Virus record (IMG/VR): IMGVR_UViG_3300042515_001753 | Coordinates: 1-64,000 of that record | Length of the DNA: 64,000 nt | Reading direction: 5' to 3' (one strand) | Part shown: piece by piece, positions 55,245 through 63,454 of the stretch | How the letters are laid out: each line of letters begins with the position of its first letter | How positions within the stretch are numbered: the stretch's first letter is position 1 | Made by a program: the position numbers and the translations under genes | The notes under the pieces: model-generated | What the model was told of the DNA's origin: nothing | What the model saw: the letters and a program-made list of their open reading frames with translations, nothing else | The model's database searches: none

Positions 55245-55424
55245 TCATTCACCAACTACAGCACCAATCTTTTCATCAAGGTCTAAAATCACGGCACGAA
55301 TGTCAGAAATACGAGGAGGAACAGAAAGTTCATCATAGGTATAACCTTTTTGATTCTCAAAAAGAATTTGACGAACGGCAGCGGCAGTCCGAACATCCAT
55401 CTTAACAGATACTGTTTTAGTCAT
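55245..55424 (-). CDS. Hypothetical protein
   Basis: ~60-aa ORF. Confidence 0.6.
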   Translation of the reverse strand: MTKTVSVKMDVRTAAAVRQILFENQKGYTYDELSVPPRISDIRAVILDLDEKIGAVVGE

Positions 55425-55834
55425 CAAATGTCTCCATCTTCACGATTTTCACTATAGTATGCGTCAAAAAATCCGTCTGGATAACGCTTCATCAGTTTAT
55501 CAATATTAGTCTGAATTACTTCATCAAAAGAGACATCAAGAGCAATACACGCTTGTGCCACATACCACATCGTATCACCCAGTTCCTTAATCAAGTGAGT
55601 ACGGGTCTCATCATTCCAAGACTTACCTTGAAAGACCATTTTCTTGACTATTTCTAAAAACTCACCACCCTCGGCATTAATTCCCACAGAGGCAGTCAGA
55701 AGACGCTCAATATTAGCACCTTTCTCATCCAACTGAACCATACGGTCAGAAAGAGCAAGGAAATCTTTGGATGCATCAGAAGTTACGGCATCTACGAAGT
55801 TCTGATACTTATTAAAATCAACTCGTTGTGTCAT
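55424..55834 (-). CDS. mazG: MazG-like nucleotide pyrophosphohydrolase
   Basis: AEGGEFLEIVKK, KELGDTMWY, NIDKLMKRYP. Confidence 0.92.
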   Translation of the reverse strand: MTQRVDFNKYQNFVDAVTSDASKDFLALSDRMVQLDEKGANIERLLTASVGINAEGGEFLEIVKKMVFQGKSWNDETRTHLIKELGDTMWYVAQACIALDVSFDEVIQTNIDKLMKRYPDGFFDAYYSENREDGDI

Positions 55835-57003
55835 GAAAATTTAAATCCCTCAAATGATTTTTTTGGTTTATTTTCTTCATTATTATACTCCTCTTCTTTA
55901 CCGCTGTCAAGTATGTCGTTTTGTGCGGACTGTTCTACATCATAAAGTCTCATTTTGGCACGGTCAATTCCAACAACGAAACGCTTAAAGATTGTTGGGT
56001 CATTATATCTGTTTTTAAGTTGCTTCACCATAATCTGCCCTAGACCTTCTAATTCCTCGGTACTAATCAGAGCAAACATAAGGTCGGCAGTAGCAGGAAG
56101 ACCGAACGATTCAGAAGTATCGGTCAATTCTACATCGGAAGAACCAAAACCGCTCCTAGTCGTCTGTGTCGCACTCATAATAGGAACATTAAACTCTACT
56201 GCCAAACCACGAAGTTCTTCGGCAATAGACTTAACCAAAGTATAAGAATTGATATTACTACCACTCTTAAATCGTGAGGAGGAGCAAATATTCAAATAGT
56301 CAATAAAGATAATATCAGGTCTAAATGATTTCTTCAGAGCAAGTTCATTCAGAAGTGCCTTGAAGTGCCCGGAGTGTGCCGAAGCAGTAGGATATTCTTT
56401 GATTACCAAAGAACCCCGAGTCTTCTTGGAAATACCATTTACTTTATTCTCAAATGCTGAGCGTGGTAAATCAATCAGTTGTTGAATTGGAACATTAAGA
56501 AGATTCGCATCAATTCTTTCGGCAATTCTTTCTTCTGCCATTTCAAGAGTAATATAAAGAACATTTCTATTCTGTAGTAAGGCAGAACTGGCAACGTGAC
56601 ACATAAAGAGAGATTTTCCAACTCCAGTATTGTGAGAGGAAACTCCATTAGTGTAATATCTATGATTTGGATGATTTACATTAATATCTACAATAGGTAT
56701 TTGTTTATTGTTTTTATAAACCCGACCAATTTTAATACCCTCGTTAGTAATCAATTTGTATATTAAGTTAGATTGTTCCATTTCTTTAGCGGAAATCCAA
56801 CCTTCAGTAGTTTCAAACAAATGGGACTCATTACAACTAACTTTATTACCCCCCATCATAAGCAATTCATATTCTTCATACATCCCCTTATTAATAAAAA
56901 AATTAACAGGAACATATCCATCGGGAGAATCAACCTCCACTTCATATCCATTATCAAGTAATGTTTTGATTTCAGCAATCGATGTTTCTTTTTCAATCCA
57001 CAT
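55831..57003 (-). CDS. 41: gp41 helicase C-terminal half preceded by split-intein IntC
   Basis: 125-aa Hint region ending SSHN, then TGVGKS, ITLEMAEE, IDYLNI, SATQTTR, KNRY. Confidence 0.95.
   Translation of the reverse strand: MWIEKETSIAEIKTLLDNGYEVEVDSPDGYVPVNFFINKGMYEEYELLMMGGNKVSCNESHLFETTEGWISAKEMEQSNLIYKLITNEGIKIGRVYKNNKQIPIVDINVNHPNHRYYTNGVSSHNTGVGKSLFMCHVASSALLQNRNVLYITLEMAEERIAERIDANLLNVPIQQLIDLPRSAFENKVNGISKKTRGSLVIKEYPTASAHSGHFKALLNELALKKSFRPDIIFIDYLNICSSSRFKSGSNINSYTLVKSIAEELRGLAVEFNVPIMSATQTTRSGFGSSDVELTDTSESFGLPATADLMFALISTEELEGLGQIMVKQLKNRYNDPTIFKRFVVGIDRAKMRLYDVEQSAQNDILDSGKEEEYNNEENKPKKSFEGFKFS
56629..57003 (-). mobile_element. Split intein C-fragment (125 aa)
   Basis: Block B CNESH, block F VDINV..HRYYTNG, terminal HN followed by Thr. 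Confidence 0.93.
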
Positions 57004-57035
57004 TTTGTATAAATACCATTAGCAGGGACAGGGAA

Positions 57036-57704
57036 ATGTTTAATCAAATCTATTCTAACTTATGTGAAGGCAATAAGTCAAGAAAAGAAAACTATAAAAA
57101 ATATTCTGGGTTACACGAACATCATATTATTCCCAAACATATGGGGGGAAGTGATGAAGATTTTAATCTAACATATTTAAATGTTAGAGAACATATATTG
57201 GCACATTATTTGTTGTGGAAGATATATAAAAATCCAAATGATTTAAGGTCTATGAAAATGTTGGGAGCAAACTTATCTCCACAATATAGAAAAATAACAG
57301 GAGAATTTTGTCGTGACAATAATATTGGTATTTTTTCCATTCCATCAAATGAAAGAAAAAAATGGACAATAAAAGGAATAGAAAGTCAAAAACAAGATTA
57401 CTTAACAAATCAAACAAAAAATTTTTACTATTGGAGCACCGAAGAGGGAAGAAAAGAAAGGGCATCTCTTGGAGGAAAGAAGATGGGGTCAAAAGAATTT
57501 AGTTATTGGGCATCTAATGAAGGAAGAAAAACACGATCATCATTAGGGGGAAAGGCGCATAAAGGAAAAAAGGTAATGCATTTGCCCGGAACAAAGGGAT
57601 GGAAAAGAATATCACCAGAAGAAGTTGATATAAAACTAAATGAAGGTTGGAAGTTTGGAACTGGAGAACCAGCACCAAACTCCAAAATCAAGAAATCTTC
57701 CTAA
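57036..57704 (+). CDS. HNH homing endonuclease, inverted between the gp41 halves
   Basis: HEHHIIPKHMGG..NLTYLNVREHILAHYLL; late promoter TATAAATA 57008-57015. Confidence 0.9.
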   Translation: MFNQIYSNLCEGNKSRKENYKKYSGLHEHHIIPKHMGGSDEDFNLTYLNVREHILAHYLLWKIYKNPNDLRSMKMLGANLSPQYRKITGEFCRDNNIGIFSIPSNERKKWTIKGIESQKQDYLTNQTKNFYYWSTEEGRKERASLGGKKMGSKEFSYWASNEGRKTRSSLGGKAHKGKKVMHLPGTKGWKRISPEEVDIKLNEGWKFGTGEPAPNSKIKKSS

Positions 57705-58320
57705 ATCTAATTTTAACTATAGTTTCTGGATGAACGCAACCGGCAAGAGCAATATTCAGAGTCTTATTAGGTAATCCACCTTTTGTGATTTTGTTGAAAT
57801 ATTCTAGGTCAAATTCAATCTTATCTTCTTTACGATGATAAAACTCATATCGTTCCTCATAATTCTGAAGATAATCGTGACCTATATTATTATCAAAAGA
57901 TACTGCCAAGGCATCGGAAAGAATACTGGGAATGGCATCTCTACCTTTTTTATCATCCTTACCATCGGCAATATGAATGGACTCCATGAGTGCCAAGTAA
58001 ATAGCACGGTCACGGCACCACTTTTCGGTAGTATCCAGTATCCACTGCTTATCCACAGGACTATCATTAAGTTTAGAAAGTAATTCTACTATTTCCTTAT
58101 TTTCAGATTCTGTCAAATCTCTACGATTATCAATCTCAATATTGAGTGCTTCTATTGTAATTGAAGAACCATACTTAACGATGAACTCAACAATTTCCTC
58201 AAAAACTATCTTTTCTACTCTTTGCTCATAGTACTCCGGTTGAATAAAAGGAATAACCTTTCTGGCATAGTCTTCATTAAATACTAAGTTTCTAAGGATT
58301 GTAAGTTCAAGTCGTTCCAT
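57688..58320 (-). CDS. 41: gp41 helicase N-terminal half with split-intein IntN
   Basis: TEKWCRDRAIY, SFDNNIGHDY, TKGGLPNKTLNIALAG. Confidence 0.95.
   Translation of the reverse strand: MERLELTILRNLVFNEDYARKVIPFIQPEYYEQRVEKIVFEEIVEFIVKYGSSITIEALNIEIDNRRDLTESENKEIVELLSKLNDSPVDKQWILDTTEKWCRDRAIYLALMESIHIADGKDDKKGRDAIPSILSDALAVSFDNNIGHDYLQNYEERYEFYHRKEDKIEFDLEYFNKITKGGLPNKTLNIALAGCVHPETIVKIRFRKIS
57691..57738 (-). mobile_element. Split intein N-fragment (16 aa)
   Basis: CVHPETIVKIRFRKIS-stop directly after IALAG. Confidence 0.9.
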
Positions 58321-58328
58321 TATTTTAA

Positions 58329-58874
58329 TTAAAGATTTCGTTTATGATGCGGAACATCGAATACAAAAGTAATTCTAATGTTGTCGCCAATATTAACTGC
58401 CTTATGGGGTAGTTTATTATTGAACCAAAATAGTGTTCCCGGTTCAATAGTTGTAGTTTCATCCCCAACAGTATACTCGTATTTTCCCTGAATGGAAAGG
58501 TGATATCTATCCTTCGTAAGATAATAAGTTCCTTCGTCAATATGAGAACCCACAATTTCACCGACTGGAAGTGCCAAGAATCCACAACGACGGAGTTTCT
58601 TAAAATACTTTCCCAAGTAATTAAGAATCTCCGTATGTTTTTCATATGCCGGGGTTTTAATACATATTTCAGTATTCCCGACATATTGGTTCTCTTTTTC
58701 AACTCCACCCATTATAAGTTGCAACACATCCACAGTAACAGTATATTCTGTGGGGTCTAGTTGTTCGGAGTCTTCAATATTTTTTTGAGAACCCCAGTCT
58801 TCAGGATATTGCTTAAGTTGTTCTAATATTTTAGAAACATTTACATTAGTTTTTATTATACGAATATTTTTCAT
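58329..58874 (-). CDS. Asp/Asn beta-hydroxylase-like 2OG-Fe(II) oxygenase
   Basis: HIDEG, RYHL, WFNNKLPH, RITFVFD. Confidence 0.85.
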   Translation of the reverse strand: MKNIRIIKTNVNVSKILEQLKQYPEDWGSQKNIEDSEQLDPTEYTVTVDVLQLIMGGVEKENQYVGNTEICIKTPAYEKHTEILNYLGKYFKKLRRCGFLALPVGEIVGSHIDEGTYYLTKDRYHLSIQGKYEYTVGDETTTIEPGTLFWFNNKLPHKAVNIGDNIRITFVFDVPHHKRNL

Positions 58875-59899
58875 ACACCATAACTAAACTCACCCTTGGC
58901 AATCACATCAAGTTTTTCCATTACTTCTGGTGTAAAATATTTTTCGGTATTTTTTAAGATTTCTTTGGCATAAAGTTTCTTACCATCAATCTCATAACGA
59001 CCTGCTACATTCTTCCAGAGTCCACCAATCTCACCAAGTTCAAGAAGACCGTAGTAACGATCAAGACCGCGCTCATCATAATACAGACGGATTTCAACAT
59101 CTTGATTCTCCTTACTTAAACGTGATTTGTGAGTCTTTGCCCTGATAATGTTTCCAATTACTTCCGTTCCATCTTTTTCTTTTGACTTAGAAAGATAGAT
59201 AATTGTAGACGCTGCATATTGCAATCCAGAACCACCAGACATTTGTTTACCACCATAAAGAGACATCGACTCATAGGTGTGATTTGTCACTAGCATAGGA
59301 ATCTTTGCCTGTCCCAATTTGAGAGTCAGCATACGGAAGGCACCTTTGATAAGTTGTGCCTTCGTCATATCACGAGTATCCTTCTCTGCCAGAGCATCAT
59401 TAATTTCTTTGTTGGTAGAAAGCATTCCCAGAGAATCTAATACAAAGATACAAGGGTTTCTTTCATCCTCTTTTTTCTTTAGGTAAATATCAACTGCCTT
59501 GAGTGTTTTGGTACGAAACTCTTCTACCGTAACTACATTGACAACCACCAGACGACTTGTGTCAACTCCCCTACTTTCCAGAAGGGATTTTGTGATTGCT
59601 GCTTCAGTATCAAAATACAGACAATATCCAGTAGGATTATTATCAAGGAAATTTTTAACGACGGCAAGACTGAAGAAAGTTTTTCCAGTAGAAGTTTCAC
59701 CAGCGATTGCAGTAATCTTATTCCCAGATACACCACCAAATATACTGCCGGATACAAGAGCATTAAAAATGTACGAACCCGTATCCACATAAGTTTCAGT
59801 TTCATCAATATCCGAAGCGAGTTGAGTGTATTCTCCACCAATCTCCTTCACTATGTCACGCAAAAAATTTAATCCAGAATCTGCCATTTTTCTACCCAT
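58871..59899 (-). CDS. uvsX: RecA-like recombinase
   Basis: AGETSTGKT, YFDTE, LDSLG, GGSGLQYAAS. Confidence 0.95.
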   Translation of the reverse strand: MGRKMADSGLNFLRDIVKEIGGEYTQLASDIDETETYVDTGSYIFNALVSGSIFGGVSGNKITAIAGETSTGKTFFSLAVVKNFLDNNPTGYCLYFDTEAAITKSLLESRGVDTSRLVVVNVVTVEEFRTKTLKAVDIYLKKKEDERNPCIFVLDSLGMLSTNKEINDALAEKDTRDMTKAQLIKGAFRMLTLKLGQAKIPMLVTNHTYESMSLYGGKQMSGGSGLQYAASTIIYLSKSKEKDGTEVIGNIIRAKTHKSRLSKENQDVEIRLYYDERGLDRYYGLLELGEIGGLWKNVAGRYEIDGKKLYAKEILKNTEKYFTPEVMEKLDVIAKGEFSYGV

Positions 59900-59932: not shown

Positions 59933-60721
59933 TCAACTTTGTTGAGGAACAGCACGATAACCTTTATGTGATTTCGTATTCCTTTTATAATTAAGAAGAT
60001 TCCAAGTAGTTCCAACATCTAAATTATTTTCTTTACAAAATTTAGTAATATTTTTCCCACAAATAATTTCACCCTGAGGATTTATAATTGAAAATTCTTT
60101 ACTTTTCTTCTCCACTATTTTATTTACAATTTCAATATCTCGTTTCTTTCCATAAAGATAATGCTTTTCCCCACTTCTTGCTTCACTCCATTTTTTCTTG
60201 GTTTCTTCTGTGTGAATTCTGCCTTTATTTGCTTCACTTATTTTTAACTTAGATTCTTCACTATGAATTTTTCCTTTCCAAGAATCTAATAATTTATTTC
60301 TATGTTCTTGAGTTAAGGGTATTCCATATTTTGGATGATTTTCTCCACTTTTAGATATACTCATTTTATTTCTAGTTTCCTCAGTCATAACATATGGTTT
60401 TTTACCTTTCTTTGATTCGGACATTCTAATTCTTGCGATTCCATAAAGATGAGAATTATAATATCTACCTTTTGATTTCATTAAAATATGAGCGTGAATC
60501 ATTTTAGTAGTTTTTTTATCCTTAATTCCACACCTCTTAATATAAATCTTTTCCAATAAAGCGTGAGCGATATAATGTTCCCTTGATGTTAGAACTACAA
60601 TCCTTTTATTATTTCCAAAGATACTTTTTGGAAATGTATGATGCTTTTCTGTATAACCTTCAGGTGGAGTTCTGTTCTCTACTTTCCTGATAAGATTGCA
60701 ATAATGCTTTAGATAGTTCAT
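59933..60721 (-). CDS. HNH homing endonuclease with NUMOD3 repeats
   Basis: EKHHTFPKS..LTSREHYIAHALL; repeated HSEESK/HTEETK, GENHPKYG. Confidence 0.9.
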   Translation of the reverse strand: MNYLKHYCNLIRKVENRTPPEGYTEKHHTFPKSIFGNNKRIVVLTSREHYIAHALLEKIYIKRCGIKDKKTTKMIHAHILMKSKGRYYNSHLYGIARIRMSESKKGKKPYVMTEETRNKMSISKSGENHPKYGIPLTQEHRNKLLDSWKGKIHSEESKLKISEANKGRIHTEETKKKWSEARSGEKHYLYGKKRDIEIVNKIVEKKSKEFSIINPQGEIICGKNITKFCKENNLDVGTTWNLLNYKRNTKSHKGYRAVPQQS

Positions 60722-60823: not shown

Positions 60824-60953
60824 CTTCCTGTTTTTGTTTATTGAGATAATTCATTTTATAAGACCAAAGTTTTTGATAAAGAGCAGTATCTCCACCAATC
60901 CTCATAGCACTAATAATAGTATTCAGTTCTTTTTCGTTAATAGGTAAATTCAT
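60816..60953 (-). CDS. Small hypothetical protein (45 aa)
   Basis: MNLPINEKELNTIISAMRIGGDTALYQKL; TGATG coupling to gp43. Confidence 0.65.
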   Translation of the reverse strand: MNLPINEKELNTIISAMRIGGDTALYQKLWSYKMNYLNKQKQEDK

Positions 60954-63454
60954 CAGGTAAAAAATGAATCAAGATTTGTTGTATGTTCGGTTTTCCATCC
61001 AATCGAATCCAAAATAGACTTGAGTGGGTCTAAGAAACTCTTCTCAAATTGTAGTTCATAATCAATATATTTGTCAAGTCCCAATTCCTTTGGAAATTCG
61101 GAGATGAAGGAAATAACATTCTCTTGTATAATATTGGGTTTTTTTAAGAAAATATACTTAACTTTCTCACCATTATTAATAAGTGAATATTTGTTAGTAA
61201 GTTTTTTCTCTTTTATATAATGATTGAAGAGAAGTGCTCCACGAACATGAATTGGAGTTTTGGATGCGTAAATATTTGATGATGAATAATATTTACGGAC
61301 ATCAGATGCCGTTCGGGGAAAAGCAATTTGCTCTGGTGGAAGAGATTTAAATTCTTGGAGGCACTCATCAATAAATCGAATCACCTCATCTTCAGTTCCA
61401 CTCATCATAATCTTCAGACCATCTTTAATCATCTTGCGGCAAGGTGCCGGAGTTGAAGACTTGACTGCCTCAATACCCATCATCTTCAATTTAGGTTCGG
61501 TGTATCGCACACCTTCACTATCCCAAACATTCAGAATGTAACGCTTCTTGGCAGTCCAAATTCCACGGTCGGCAATATTCTCCCGTTTCATTTGCATCTT
61601 TTGATCGTATGCGTTTACATAGTCCGCCAGTTCTTGGTAGCAACCTTCAATATACTTTTCAAGTTCCACCTTACAGATCTTATCAAGGAACGAAACAACG
61701 CTTTCAGTAGTTTTCTCTCTTCCCTGGTATACAGTTTCAACCAAAGGACCCATATTGAGATAAATGGAGTCAGTATCAGAAGCAATAACATAATCAACAC
61801 TCTTAGTTTTAAGAACTTTGTTTAGATAAGAGTTCATCTTCTCTTCAATCCAACGAATGGCAACCTGACCCGAAAGAGTAATTGCCTCAGCATTTGCTAG
61901 TTTGAAATAACGGAAATACTGATTCCCAATAGCACCATAAGCAGAGTTAAGAGAAATCTTTTTTGCCATTTGGATGTTATTACATCTTGCAATTTCTTTC
62001 TCAAGTTCTTTTGATTTTTTCTTCTCATACTGTTTTTTTGCCTCAATCATCTTCTCCTTATATACAACACGATCATTATACATTTTCTCCATTAGTTCTG
62101 GAAGAAAACCACGAATGTCCTTACGGTACATAGCACCATTAGGGCAAACTGCATAATCCTTATACATATCAAAAGTAAGTTCCTGATTGAGAATTTTATC
62201 CACGGTTACACTAGGATGCCTTTCTTCAACAAGTGTTTCGGGACTTACATTAAATTGCATAATCAAATGTGGATAAAGACTGTTTAAGTCAAAATTAACC
62301 ACCCAATCATACTTTCCAGGAATTGGTTCTTTTACATAAGCTCCAGCATACTTGGAATCTTTATCAGTTTTTTCTTTCGGAGGAATTACAATATTCCTCT
62401 GCTTAAGATAATTATAGATAATCGTATCCCACATTCTTACCTGAGAAAACACATCCTCATAGTTTACCTTACCATCATATGCCATAGTCAAGGCAAGTTC
62501 AATCAGTTTCATCTTGTCTTCCAAACGGTCAACAAGTTCTACGTCAACGATGTTGTATTCTACAAACTTCTGCCAACCTTTAGTATAGAAGTCCTTAAAA
62601 GTATCAAACTCAGAGTGATCCAGTTTTTTCTGATTGAGTTCTACGCTGGCAATATGATCTAGACGATAAGATTCCTGCGCTTTATAAGTGAATTTCTTAT
62701 AAAGTTTAATGTAATCTAATTGACTAATACCACCAATATCATAGGAAATGTGCTTTCTTCCAGATATGTAAACTTCATCCTCAGTCACAAGACCCCAGGG
62801 TGACATACGCTTCATCAATTTCTCACCCAAAACTCTATCCAGGCGACGAACGAGATAGGGAATATCATAAAGTTCACTGTTCCAACCAGTAATAACCTCT
62901 GGAGTATTATCCTCAATCATCCACCAGTGAATAAAATCATTTAATAGACTATACTCATCAGAGAATCCTCGGTAAGAAACATTTGATTGATTATTATCAA
63001 ACTTACCCAATCCCCAAGTACGAATTTGTTTCGTATTATAGTCTTGAAGTGTAATGAGTAGTACTTCTTCTGCCGCATTTTCCACATCAGGAAATCCATT
63101 TTCGGATGCAACCTCAATGTCAATTGTGGTAAGTTTAATTTTACTAATATCAAACTTAATTTCATTTTCCGGATATTTGTCCGAAATATATTGATAGATG
63201 TACTTGTCGTTTCCGTAAATTTTAAAGTTTTGTACATCAGTATACTTCTTAATAAACTCTCTACAATCCCTTACAGAACCAGGTTGAATAGGTTCTACAT
63301 ATTCTCCCTGAAGTGTCGTATATTTGGTTGTTTTTTTAGACGGAACAAAAAGAGTAGGAGAGAACTTCTCACGGGTCATAAAATGTCTACCATTTTCATA
63401 ACCACGAACCAAGAAGTGGTCCCCAACCATTTGCACGTTTGTATAAAAATTCAT
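60953..63454 (-). CDS. 43: Family B DNA polymerase (T4 gp43)
   Basis: DIEV, DLNSLYP, KISLNSAYG, SDTDS, KKRY. Confidence 0.97.
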   Translation of the reverse strand: MNFYTNVQMVGDHFLVRGYENGRHFMTREKFSPTLFVPSKKTTKYTTLQGEYVEPIQPGSVRDCREFIKKYTDVQNFKIYGNDKYIYQYISDKYPENEIKFDISKIKLTTIDIEVASENGFPDVENAAEEVLLITLQDYNTKQIRTWGLGKFDNNQSNVSYRGFSDEYSLLNDFIHWWMIEDNTPEVITGWNSELYDIPYLVRRLDRVLGEKLMKRMSPWGLVTEDEVYISGRKHISYDIGGISQLDYIKLYKKFTYKAQESYRLDHIASVELNQKKLDHSEFDTFKDFYTKGWQKFVEYNIVDVELVDRLEDKMKLIELALTMAYDGKVNYEDVFSQVRMWDTIIYNYLKQRNIVIPPKEKTDKDSKYAGAYVKEPIPGKYDWVVNFDLNSLYPHLIMQFNVSPETLVEERHPSVTVDKILNQELTFDMYKDYAVCPNGAMYRKDIRGFLPELMEKMYNDRVVYKEKMIEAKKQYEKKKSKELEKEIARCNNIQMAKKISLNSAYGAIGNQYFRYFKLANAEAITLSGQVAIRWIEEKMNSYLNKVLKTKSVDYVIASDTDSIYLNMGPLVETVYQGREKTTESVVSFLDKICKVELEKYIEGCYQELADYVNAYDQKMQMKRENIADRGIWTAKKRYILNVWDSEGVRYTEPKLKMMGIEAVKSSTPAPCRKMIKDGLKIMMSGTEDEVIRFIDECLQEFKSLPPEQIAFPRTASDVRKYYSSSNIYASKTPIHVRGALLFNHYIKEKKLTNKYSLINNGEKVKYIFLKKPNIIQENVISFISEFPKELGLDKYIDYELQFEKSFLDPLKSILDSIGWKTEHTTNLDSFFT

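What the first reader, a model, noticed from the sequence alone, without database searches (positions are those of the whole stretch)
55831..58320. gp41 helicase fractured by an atypically split intein (16-aa IntN, Thr+1)
Seen: one gene ends IALAG-CVHPETIVKIRFRKIS. The other starts with 125 aa ending HPNHRYYTNGVSSHN-TGVGKS. Trans-splicing restores Walker A (AGTGVGKS) and a 459-aa helicase (194+265). Known: gp41-1-type split inteins have a long IntN, and very short IntN pieces (AceL-TerL, VidaL) are rare; this pair resembles VidaL as I recall it. An essential replicative helicase thus depends on trans-splicing. A 16-aa synthetic tag with a Thr nucleophile would be useful for protein labelling.
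Basis: partly seen in the sequence, partly recalled or inferred. Interest (0 to 1): 0.88.

Follow-up and report, generated by a model that had tools for sequence, protein, structure and literature searches.

The report
Split intein in cyanophage helicase gene
An uncultured T4-like cyanophage encodes its replicative helicase as two genes that are very likely joined by a self-removing protein element (a split intein) with a 16-residue first half; it is a real and common wild relative of the laboratory tool VidaL, not a new kind of system.

Summary
The gene at 57688..58320(-) ends in ...IALAG followed by a 16-residue tail that starts with Cys. The gene at 55831..57003(-) starts with 125 non-helicase residues ending in His-Asn, followed by TGVGKS. 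An intein-less cyanophage gp41 reads ...IALAG|TGVGKS... across exactly this point, inside Walker A.

The closest solved structure to the 125-residue head, by sequence and by fold, is the VidaL intein, with the same split point after the second strand.

Eighty related viral contigs show this intein at this site in every stage:
- contiguous;
- split without an endonuclease;
- split with one of several endonucleases, in either orientation;
- split with endonuclease remnants, or with extra cargo genes in the gap.

One contig is a clean empty-site allele. The intein, the endonuclease and the helicase parts are all under purifying selection, and the cassette is more conserved in DNA than the helicase around it.

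Verdict: a functional, mobile, atypically split class-1 intein, and a new member of a known kind. VidaL itself is closer to a UvsX-borne branch of the family. Relatives with a 14-residue first half are the most useful lead.

The parts
57739..58320 (-). N-extein: gp41 helicase residues 1-194, ending ...LNIALAG (the first two residues of Walker A)
   Evidence: ORF. phrog_19 match of residues 2-194 to profile 161-361. Alignment to intein-less S-SM2 gp41.
57691..57738 (-). IntN, 16 aa (CVHPETIVKIRFRKIS), net charge +3. The first 14 residues are the conserved core; the last two are part of a variable tail. The stop codon is at 57688..57690.
   Evidence: Core conserved across about 70 loci, tails vary from 0 to 9 aa. 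Aligns to the IntN part of VidaL via a natural contiguous allele. Forms the strand before the split loop in the model. Charge.
57036..57704 (+). Free-standing HNH (MobE-like) homing-endonuclease gene, 222 aa counted from Met19 of the mechanical ORF 56982..57704. It lies antisense to the helicase, and its last codons overlap the last codons of IntN.
   Evidence: phrog_655 'homing endonuclease' 7e-15. Weak Pfam HNH hit, 0.012. 34% identity to annotated MobE/homing endonucleases of T4-like Klebsiella phages. Homologous ORFs in L025 and L026 start at the equivalent Met. dN/dS 0.11-0.14.
57008..57015 (+). TATAAATA, which is the T4 late-promoter consensus. It is followed by AGGGACAGGGA, about 20 nt before the endonuclease ATG.
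   Evidence: Read from the sequence. Conserved in all endonuclease-bearing loci, including those with an unrelated (36% identity) endonuclease. Its function is inferred.
57052..57081 (-). Sigma-70-like element TTGACT-18-TAGAAT on the helicase strand, about 50 nt upstream of the IntC start. It is a candidate promoter for the C half.
   Evidence: Consensus scan (24 sites found against 17 expected, so weak on its own). Conserved in related loci. The unrelated endonuclease cassette in L001 and L035 has TTTACA-17-TATGAT at the same place. It lies inside the endonuclease coding sequence, so the conservation is ambiguous.
56629..57003 (-). IntC, 125 aa (MWIEKE...VSSHN), net charge -7. It contains the block B His (CNESH), block F (IVDINVNHPNHRYY) and the terminal His-Asn.
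   Evidence: VidaL match at 1.1e-11. Columns invariant in 37 sequences. dN/dS median 0.26. Charge.
55831..56628 (-). C-extein: gp41 residues 195-459 plus the stop codon. It starts with Thr+1 (TGVGKS, the rest of Walker A) and continues into the RecA-like ATPase domain. The second intein site (TRSGF|GSS) is unoccupied here.
   Evidence: Pfam DnaB_C 3.7e-16 for residues 126-312. phrog_19 match of residues 126-378 to profile 362-598. Alignment to S-SM2 gp41. Relatives with a gp41-1-like intein at the second site.

Best explanation
The replicative helicase gp41 of this uncultured T4-like cyanomyovirus is encoded as two genes. They are separated by a homing-endonuclease gene that sits inside a class-1 mini-intein, in the loop after its second beta-strand.

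How the helicase is made:
- The N product is the helicase N-domain plus a basic 16-residue IntN. The C product is an acidic 125-residue IntC plus the ATPase domain.
- The two are inferred to associate and complete the Hint fold.
- They then splice in trans. Cys1 forms a thioester, the acyl group is transferred to the hydroxyl of Thr+1, and the terminal Asn cyclises with help from the preceding His. An O-to-N shift then forms the Gly194-Thr195 bond.
- This restores Walker A (AGTGVGKS) and yields a 459-residue helicase.

How the element spreads:
- The endonuclease is probably made late in infection, from a T4-type late promoter.
- It is inferred to cut endonuclease-free alleles during co-infection, so that repair copies the cassette and the neighbouring intein DNA.

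What is shown: the anatomy, the homology, the fold of a natural contiguous allele, purifying selection, the mosaic conservation pattern and an empty-site allele.

What is inferred: the splicing chemistry, the timing of expression and the endonuclease target.
For: - Junction: exact extein abutment against a helicase profile and against intein-less S-SM2 gp41.
- Homology: IntC and a natural contiguous allele match VidaL (6vgv) at 1.1e-11 and 1.8e-13, with the same split position and the same 16-residue N part.
- Fold: the AF2 model of the contiguous allele L064:3935-4390 has pLDDT 90.1. The split falls in the loop at model residues 19-23, between strands 12-18 and 24-29. The best structural match is VidaL (TM 0.84/0.88), followed by about 45 other inteins.
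- Catalytic set: Cys1 is present in every N piece. The block B His, block F Asp, His-Asn and Thr+1 are invariant in 37 sequences.
- Selection: IntC dN/dS 0.26, C-extein 0.10, endonuclease 0.11-0.14.
- Mobility: L001 shares 99% IntC DNA with the window, but only 78% in the exteins and 61% in the gap. In general the endonuclease (83-88%) and IntC (76-91%) are more conserved in DNA than the exteins (66-78%).
- Empty site: L082 reads ...AGGAAGATA|ATGTGGATT..., with IntC DNA 97.9% identical to the window.
- Stages of invasion and loss: contiguous, split without an endonuclease, split with an endonuclease, and endonuclease remnants are all seen at this one site, as in the gene-breaking model of PMC2677866.
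- Other support: no second helicase copy in the window, no intron model matches, and opposite net charges of the two halves (+3 and -7).
Against: - No experimental evidence of a spliced product exists for this allele or any member of this helicase branch.
- Pfam Hint models are below threshold.
- The usual Thr of block B (TxxH) is Asn here.
- Only 64 kb of a genome of about 234 kb is in hand, so a second helicase elsewhere cannot be excluded.
- How the C half is transcribed past an antisense gene is unresolved.
- The endonuclease target is unknown.
Confidence: 0.85

Rival explanations
1. The helicase gene is a decaying pseudogene that was broken by an endonuclease insertion. The phage relies on another helicase.
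For: Only 64 kb of the genome was examined. Some related loci carry endonuclease remnants (L051, L056), so decay does occur in this region.
Against: Both exteins and the intein are under purifying selection across dozens of divergent loci. All catalytic intein residues are invariant. The same architecture recurs in about 60 contigs, some longer than 100 kb. No second copy is present in the window.
Confidence: 0.04
2. The two halves associate through the intein pieces without splicing and work as a non-covalent helicase.
For: Split intein halves bind tightly, and the two halves carry opposite charges.
Against: The intein sits inside Walker A, between AG and TGVGKS. An unexcised 141-residue domain would disrupt the nucleotide-binding loop. 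The conserved Cys1, His-Asn and Thr+1 would not be needed for binding alone.
Confidence: 0.04
3. The halves are joined at the RNA level (an intron, trans-splicing or translational bypass), or the split is an assembly artefact.
For: None was found.
Against: No Rfam intron or other RNA family matches in 55400..58900. The gap is a protein-coding gene on the other strand that is under purifying selection. The flanks encode Hint-fold blocks. Identical loci occur in four separate metagenome assemblies.
Confidence: 0.01

Closest known systems
VidaL intein (atypically split; PDB 6vgv/6vgw; Burton et al. 2020, as cited in PMC13014065)
   Same: Closest solved structure by both sequence and fold. It has a 16-residue IntN with Cys1 and is split right after the second strand (the S1 position, PMC13014065). 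IntC is about 123-125 residues and ends ...HPNHRYY..G..SH-N. It sits next to a P-loop-like G...|[ST]G context.
   Different: Only about 29-37% identical. VidaL matches a UvsX/RecA-borne split IntC (P0237, SHN|SGKS) at 4e-34, against 1e-11 for this one, so its native host is probably a recombinase and not gp41. The crystal construct has Ser at +1; here it is Thr. VidaL has been tested experimentally and this intein has not. My recollection that a 'T4-like helicase' VidaL-type intein was listed in the original metagenomic survey could not be checked, because the papers are not held.
Fractured genes and the gp41-1 split intein (Dassa et al. 2009, PMC2677866)
   Same: The same host gene (cyanophage gp41, next to uvsX and a 2OG oxygenase-like gene). 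[quoted passage not shown] The same proposed invasion-and-loss model fits. Relatives of this locus carry a gp41-1-like intein as well, at TRSGF|S.
   Different: The insertion site differs: Walker A at about residue 194, against position 356 of P-SSM2 gp41. The split is atypical (16 + 125 aa) rather than canonical (88-105 + 33-54 aa). The endonuclease is HNH/MobE-like rather than GIY-YIG or Vsr-like. It lies on the opposite strand, whereas all three genes were on one strand in all 26 loci of that paper.
AceL-TerL and GOS-TerL atypically split inteins
   Same: Natural phage-derived split inteins with a short IntN and a long IntC (PMC13014065). The GOS terminase case with a 122-residue C part is in PMC2677866.
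   Different: These are split one element later, after the first helix (the S2 position), with IntN of 25-37 aa. The host is terminase, not helicase.
PolB16 OarG intein (PMC10189870)
   Same: Split at S1, with IntN of 15 aa, which that paper calls the shortest characterised.
   Different: It is cysteine-less (Ser1/Ser+1), has a 168-residue IntC and a PolB host, and is a weak structural match (TM about 0.55). Relatives of the present intein have 14-residue IntN pieces (L025, L075), which are untested.

Membership tests
Class-1 intein (Hint domain) | Nucleophile (Cys/Ser/Thr) at intein position 1 | tested here: met
   Cys follows ...ALAG in the window and in all about 70 N pieces.
Class-1 intein (Hint domain) | Block B histidine, block F, C-terminal His-Asn, and Cys/Ser/Thr at +1 | tested here: met
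   CNxxH, IVDINV.H.NHRY, SHN and T+1 are invariant in 37 aligned sequences. The block B Thr position is Asn.
Class-1 intein (Hint domain) | Hint fold | tested here: met
   The model of a natural contiguous allele has pLDDT 90.1. The top 46 PDB matches are inteins or BIL domains, with VidaL best at TM 0.84-0.88. Pfam Hint HMMs are below threshold.
Class-1 intein (Hint domain) | Demonstrated protein splicing | not testable with these tools
   This needs expression and mass spectrometry.
Atypically split intein of the S1 / VidaL type | IntN far shorter than IntC, with the split directly after the second beta-strand | tested here: met
   16 aa against 125 aa. The split loop lies between strands 12-18 and 24-29 of the model. 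The split column is the same as in VidaL. The S1 definition is from PMC13014065.
Atypically split intein of the S1 / VidaL type | Significant sequence similarity to VidaL | tested here: met
   E = 1.1e-11 and 1.8e-13.
Atypically split intein of the S1 / VidaL type | Same host protein and insertion site as VidaL (an allele of it) | tested here: inconclusive
   The native exteins of VidaL could not be read from any held paper. VidaL matches a UvsX-borne piece far better than this helicase-borne one, which argues against allelism.
Fractured gene in the sense of Dassa et al. 2009 | [quoted passage not shown] | tested here: met
Fractured gene in the sense of Dassa et al. 2009 | All three coding regions on the same strand, with a GIY-YIG or Vsr-like endonuclease | tested here: not met
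   The endonuclease is on the + strand and the helicase halves are on the - strand. It is of HNH type. One relative, L072, has it on the same strand.
gp41-1 split-intein family | Insertion at the SGF|S site of gp41, with a canonical split (IntN about 88 aa) | tested here: not met
   That site is intact in the window (TRSGF|GSS). The gp41-1 structure is only a distant match (E 1.7e-4).

The most novel reading that the evidence does not exclude
This helicase-borne lineage is separate from the characterised VidaL. Its functional IntN is only the 14-residue core CVHPET.VKIRFRK, with a Thr+1 nucleophile. Natural alleles such as L025 and L075 would then be the shortest natural IntN known. In addition, the split loop may serve as a landing pad where endonuclease cassettes and cargo genes arrive with their own outward-facing promoter. 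The ATPase half would then be transcribed separately from the N half, and helicase assembly would be set by the timing of the two transcripts.
Probability: 0.25. Interest if true: 0.55.

Novelty: new member of a known kind. Interest (0 to 1): 0.38.

Why it matters
For phage biology, this one site shows the whole life cycle of an intein and its endonuclease. Contiguous, invaded, endonuclease-lost and endonuclease-decayed forms all occur, there is a clean empty-site allele, and the DNA conservation pattern points to horizontal movement. It is a natural test set for the gene-breaking model proposed in 2009.

It also shows that an essential replication enzyme of abundant marine phages is routinely made from two polypeptides. 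In relatives with a second split intein it would be made from three.

For protein engineering, the family offers dozens of natural variants of a VidaL-like intein, with 14-23-residue first halves and a Thr at +1. These could give orthogonal or shorter tags. None of this changes what is known about how split inteins work.

Tried and rejected
- Papers: the two papers that describe VidaL (PMC7275667, PMC10241006) are not held. A text search for 'T4Lh' found only unrelated papers. No held supplement gave the VidaL exteins. VidaL's native host therefore had to be inferred from database relatives.
- Short query: a 30-residue query covering IntN alone found nothing in the PDB. The IntN comparison was made instead through a natural contiguous allele. 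The two window halves were never joined.
- Pfam: Hint and intein models give only sub-threshold hits.
- Alignments: two alignments that included short N-tail fragments were misaligned by MAFFT and were discarded (A2 and A3). A4 was used.
- Ankyrin/DARPin hits to IntC residues 9-60 were rejected as multi-repeat score inflation.
- The endonuclease has no solved relative by sequence.
- The sigma-70-like promoter for the C half is not statistically supported by the scan alone and overlaps coding sequence, so it is kept only as a hypothesis.
- No cultured cyanophage carries this intein. The nearest matches in isolates are cis-inteins of about 30% identity in Pseudomonas phage UvsX and Salmonella phage terminase.
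Full report
**1. The observation**

- The gene at 57688..58320 on the minus strand gives 210 residues. It ends in ...TLNIALAG, then CVHPETIVKIRFRKIS, then a stop.
- The gene at 55831..57003 on the minus strand gives 390 residues. The first 125 end in ...HPNHRYYTNGVSSHN and are followed by TGVGKSLF....
- Pfam finds DnaB_C only from residue 126 of the second protein.
- The PHROG helicase profile phrog_19 matches residues 2-194 of the first protein to profile positions 161-361. It matches residues 126-378 of the second to positions 362-598. The two helicase parts therefore abut exactly, and the 16-residue tail and 125-residue head are foreign to the helicase.
- The gp41 of Synechococcus phage S-SM2 (458 residues, no intein) reads ...LNIALAG|TGVGKSLF... 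across the point.
- The insertion lies inside Walker A. The predicted product of 194 + 265 = 459 residues has the expected length.

**2.

The 684 bases between the stop of the first gene and the start of the second are not empty.
- On the plus strand lies an ORF (mechanically 56982..57704). It matches PHROG homing-endonuclease families (phrog_655, 7e-15).
- It has a weak Pfam HNH match.
- It is 34% identical to genes annotated as MobE or homing endonuclease in T4-like Klebsiella phages.
- In related loci the homologous ORF starts at the Met that corresponds to residue 19. The gene is therefore most likely 57036..57704, 222 residues.
- About 20 bases upstream of that ATG is TATAAATA (57008..57015), the T4 late-promoter consensus, followed by a purine-rich stretch. 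Both are conserved in every endonuclease-bearing relative, including those with an unrelated endonuclease.
- The endonuclease is under purifying selection (dN/dS 0.11-0.14).

**3. Is it an intein, and which one**

- The 125-residue head has VidaL (6vgv) as its best PDB match (E = 1.1e-11), with gp41-1 as a distant match.
The databases hold natural relatives in which the same intein is contiguous (P0041, P0117, and loci L062-L066 and L068).
- One of these, L064:3929-4399, aligns to the fused VidaL chain from the Gly before position 1, through the 16-residue N part, to the C-terminal His (E = 1.8e-13). VidaL's break between its N and C parts falls in the same column as the break in the window.
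- An AlphaFold model of that natural contiguous allele, built with 37 natural sequences, has mean pLDDT 90.1. It places the break in the loop (model residues 19-23) between a strand formed by the N part and the next strand, which is followed by the first helix.
- Foldseek returns the VidaL crystal structure first (TM 0.84/0.88, rmsd 1.8 A), followed by some 45 other intein structures.
- The literature defines VidaL as split right after the second strand, with a 16-residue N part (PMC13014065).
- Cys1 is present in all N pieces. The block B His, the block F Asp, the terminal His-Asn and Thr+1 are invariant.
- Pfam Hint models miss the domain (E about 0.06).

**4. Population evidence**

A search of 5.8 billion proteins with the IntC part found 809 relatives, nearly all of them IntC-plus-helicase pieces of about 390 residues from metagenomes. 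Eighty IMG/VR viral contigs were fetched. Four of them are identical to the window over the whole locus. One of these is a 233,886-base contig. Seventy loci carry both sides of the junction:

| Architecture | Loci |
|---|---|
| Antisense endonuclease of the window's type | 49 (18 of them with gaps of 1.1-1.6 kb) |
| Antisense endonuclease, 36% identical | 5 |
| Antisense endonuclease, 47-50% identical | 3 |
| Endonuclease on the helicase strand (L072) | 1 |
| Endonuclease remnants only | 2 |
| Split, no endonuclease (stop and start overlapping or 5 bases apart) | 4 |
| Contiguous intein | 6 |

- The larger gaps hold additional ORFs.
- The N part has a nearly invariant 14-residue core, CVHPET.VKIRFRK, followed by 0-9 variable residues. 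Two loci (L025, L075) stop right after the core.
- The +1 residue is always Thr.
- L082, the contig that encodes P0041, is an empty-site allele. It reads ...AGGAAGATA|ATGTGGATT..., and its IntC DNA is 97.9% identical to the window.

**5. Selection and mobility**

- Pairwise dN/dS is 0.26 (median of 695 pairs) for IntC and 0.10 for the first 150 codons of the C-extein.
- In DNA identity to the window allele, the endonuclease (83-88%) and IntC (76-91%) are more conserved than the flanking helicase (66-78%).
- L001 combines 99% identical IntC DNA with 78% identical exteins and a different endonuclease.
- This is the pattern expected if the cassette and the adjacent intein DNA move between helicase alleles by homing and recombination.
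- All the stages fit the model of Dassa et al. (PMC2677866, section on gene breaking): a contiguous mini-intein, invasion by an endonuclease, then loss of the endonuclease leaving a split intein.

**6. How it most likely works**

- Shown: two ORFs, an exact junction, the fold, conserved catalytic residues, and opposite net charges of the halves (+3 and -7).
- Inferred: the halves associate and undergo standard class-1 splicing through a Cys1 thioester and a Thr+1 oxyester. This restores AGTGVGKS.
- Excision is necessary, because 141 foreign residues would otherwise sit inside the nucleotide-binding loop.
- No second helicase gene is present in the 64 kb, and no intron model matches the region.
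- How the C half is transcribed is open. No terminator-like site lies between the halves on the helicase strand, so read-through is possible.
- A sigma-70-like element (57081..57052) sits about 50 bases upstream of the IntC start. The unrelated cassette of L001 and L035 has a similar element at the same place. That element overlaps endonuclease coding sequence, and the scan is not significant on its own.

**7. Comparison with what is known**

The closest characterised relative is VidaL, but it is not an allele.
- A split IntC attached to a UvsX/RecA-like extein (P0237, SHN|SGKS) matches VidaL at 4e-34, far better than the window's piece.
- A search of 1.8 billion cluster representatives found 483 relatives.
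- Among the best 150, the family sits in the P-loops of gp41/DnaB-like helicases in two registers and of RecA/UvsX proteins. It also sits in a UvrD-type helicase (after SVHN|CQD) and in an unidentified protein.
- It occurs in both contiguous and split forms. Thr is the commonest +1 residue: 42 of 57 recognisable junctions.
- Compared with the fractured gp41-1 loci of Dassa et al., this locus has the same host gene and the same principle. It differs in the insertion site, the split position, the endonuclease family and the orientation of the endonuclease.
- No cultured phage in the 50,697-record collection carries a close relative. The window itself is only about 77% identical to cultured Synechococcus phages, and only in uvsX.

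**8. Verdict**

This is a new, untested member of the known class of atypically split, phage-borne inteins. It is abundant in nature and well documented here by comparative data. It is not a new kind of system. Its main value is as a natural series for studying intein and endonuclease evolution, and as a source of very short N parts for protein ligation.

Noticed in passing
window 59933..60721 (-): A second free-standing HNH homing-endonuclease-like ORF (262 aa, about 30% identical to the one in the intein gap). It has repeated G..H..YGK-type motifs and sits between uvsX and the gp43 DNA polymerase gene (60953..63454). S-SM2 has only a 56-residue ORF at that position.
   Followed up: partly
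window 56824..56977 (-), IntC residues 9-60: This stretch gives multi-stretch hits to designed ankyrin repeat proteins in the PDB and to giant ankyrin-repeat proteins in the 1.8-billion-protein library. Single stretches are not significant. It looks like a chance resemblance between a helix-plus-hairpin and one ankyrin repeat.
   Followed up: partly
P0001, P0092, P0121; L030, L049, L056, L063-L066: In relatives the same helicase carries a second intein, gp41-1-like, at TRSGF|S, and sometimes a third at ...TSE|C. The helicase is then made from three pieces or has three inteins. The window has only the first.
   Followed up: partly
L026 2590..3225 (+); L025 2924..3295 (+): Extra ORFs of 211 aa and 123 aa lie inside the split gap, between the IntN stop and the endonuclease. 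The first has no family match. The second has an HExxH motif and weak metallopeptidase-like hits. The intein's split loop seems to collect cargo genes.
   Followed up: partly
P0153 (605 aa), P0173 (222 aa): The same intein family occurs in an unidentified protein (SHN|TRRYKNSS...), again with Thr+1, in both contiguous and split forms. P0153 also begins with a second IntC-like piece.
   Followed up: no
L082 534..3324: In the empty-site contig the cupin/2OG-oxygenase-like gene that separates uvsX from gp41 in the window (58329..58874) is absent, and uvsX overlaps the start of gp41.
   Followed up: no
window 57430..57570 (+), endonuclease residues about 130-180: The C-terminal half of the endonuclease contains two copies of a W-[ST]-x-E-G-R-K-x-R-[AS]-S-L-G-G-K motif. 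This is probably a repeated DNA-binding module.
   Followed up: no
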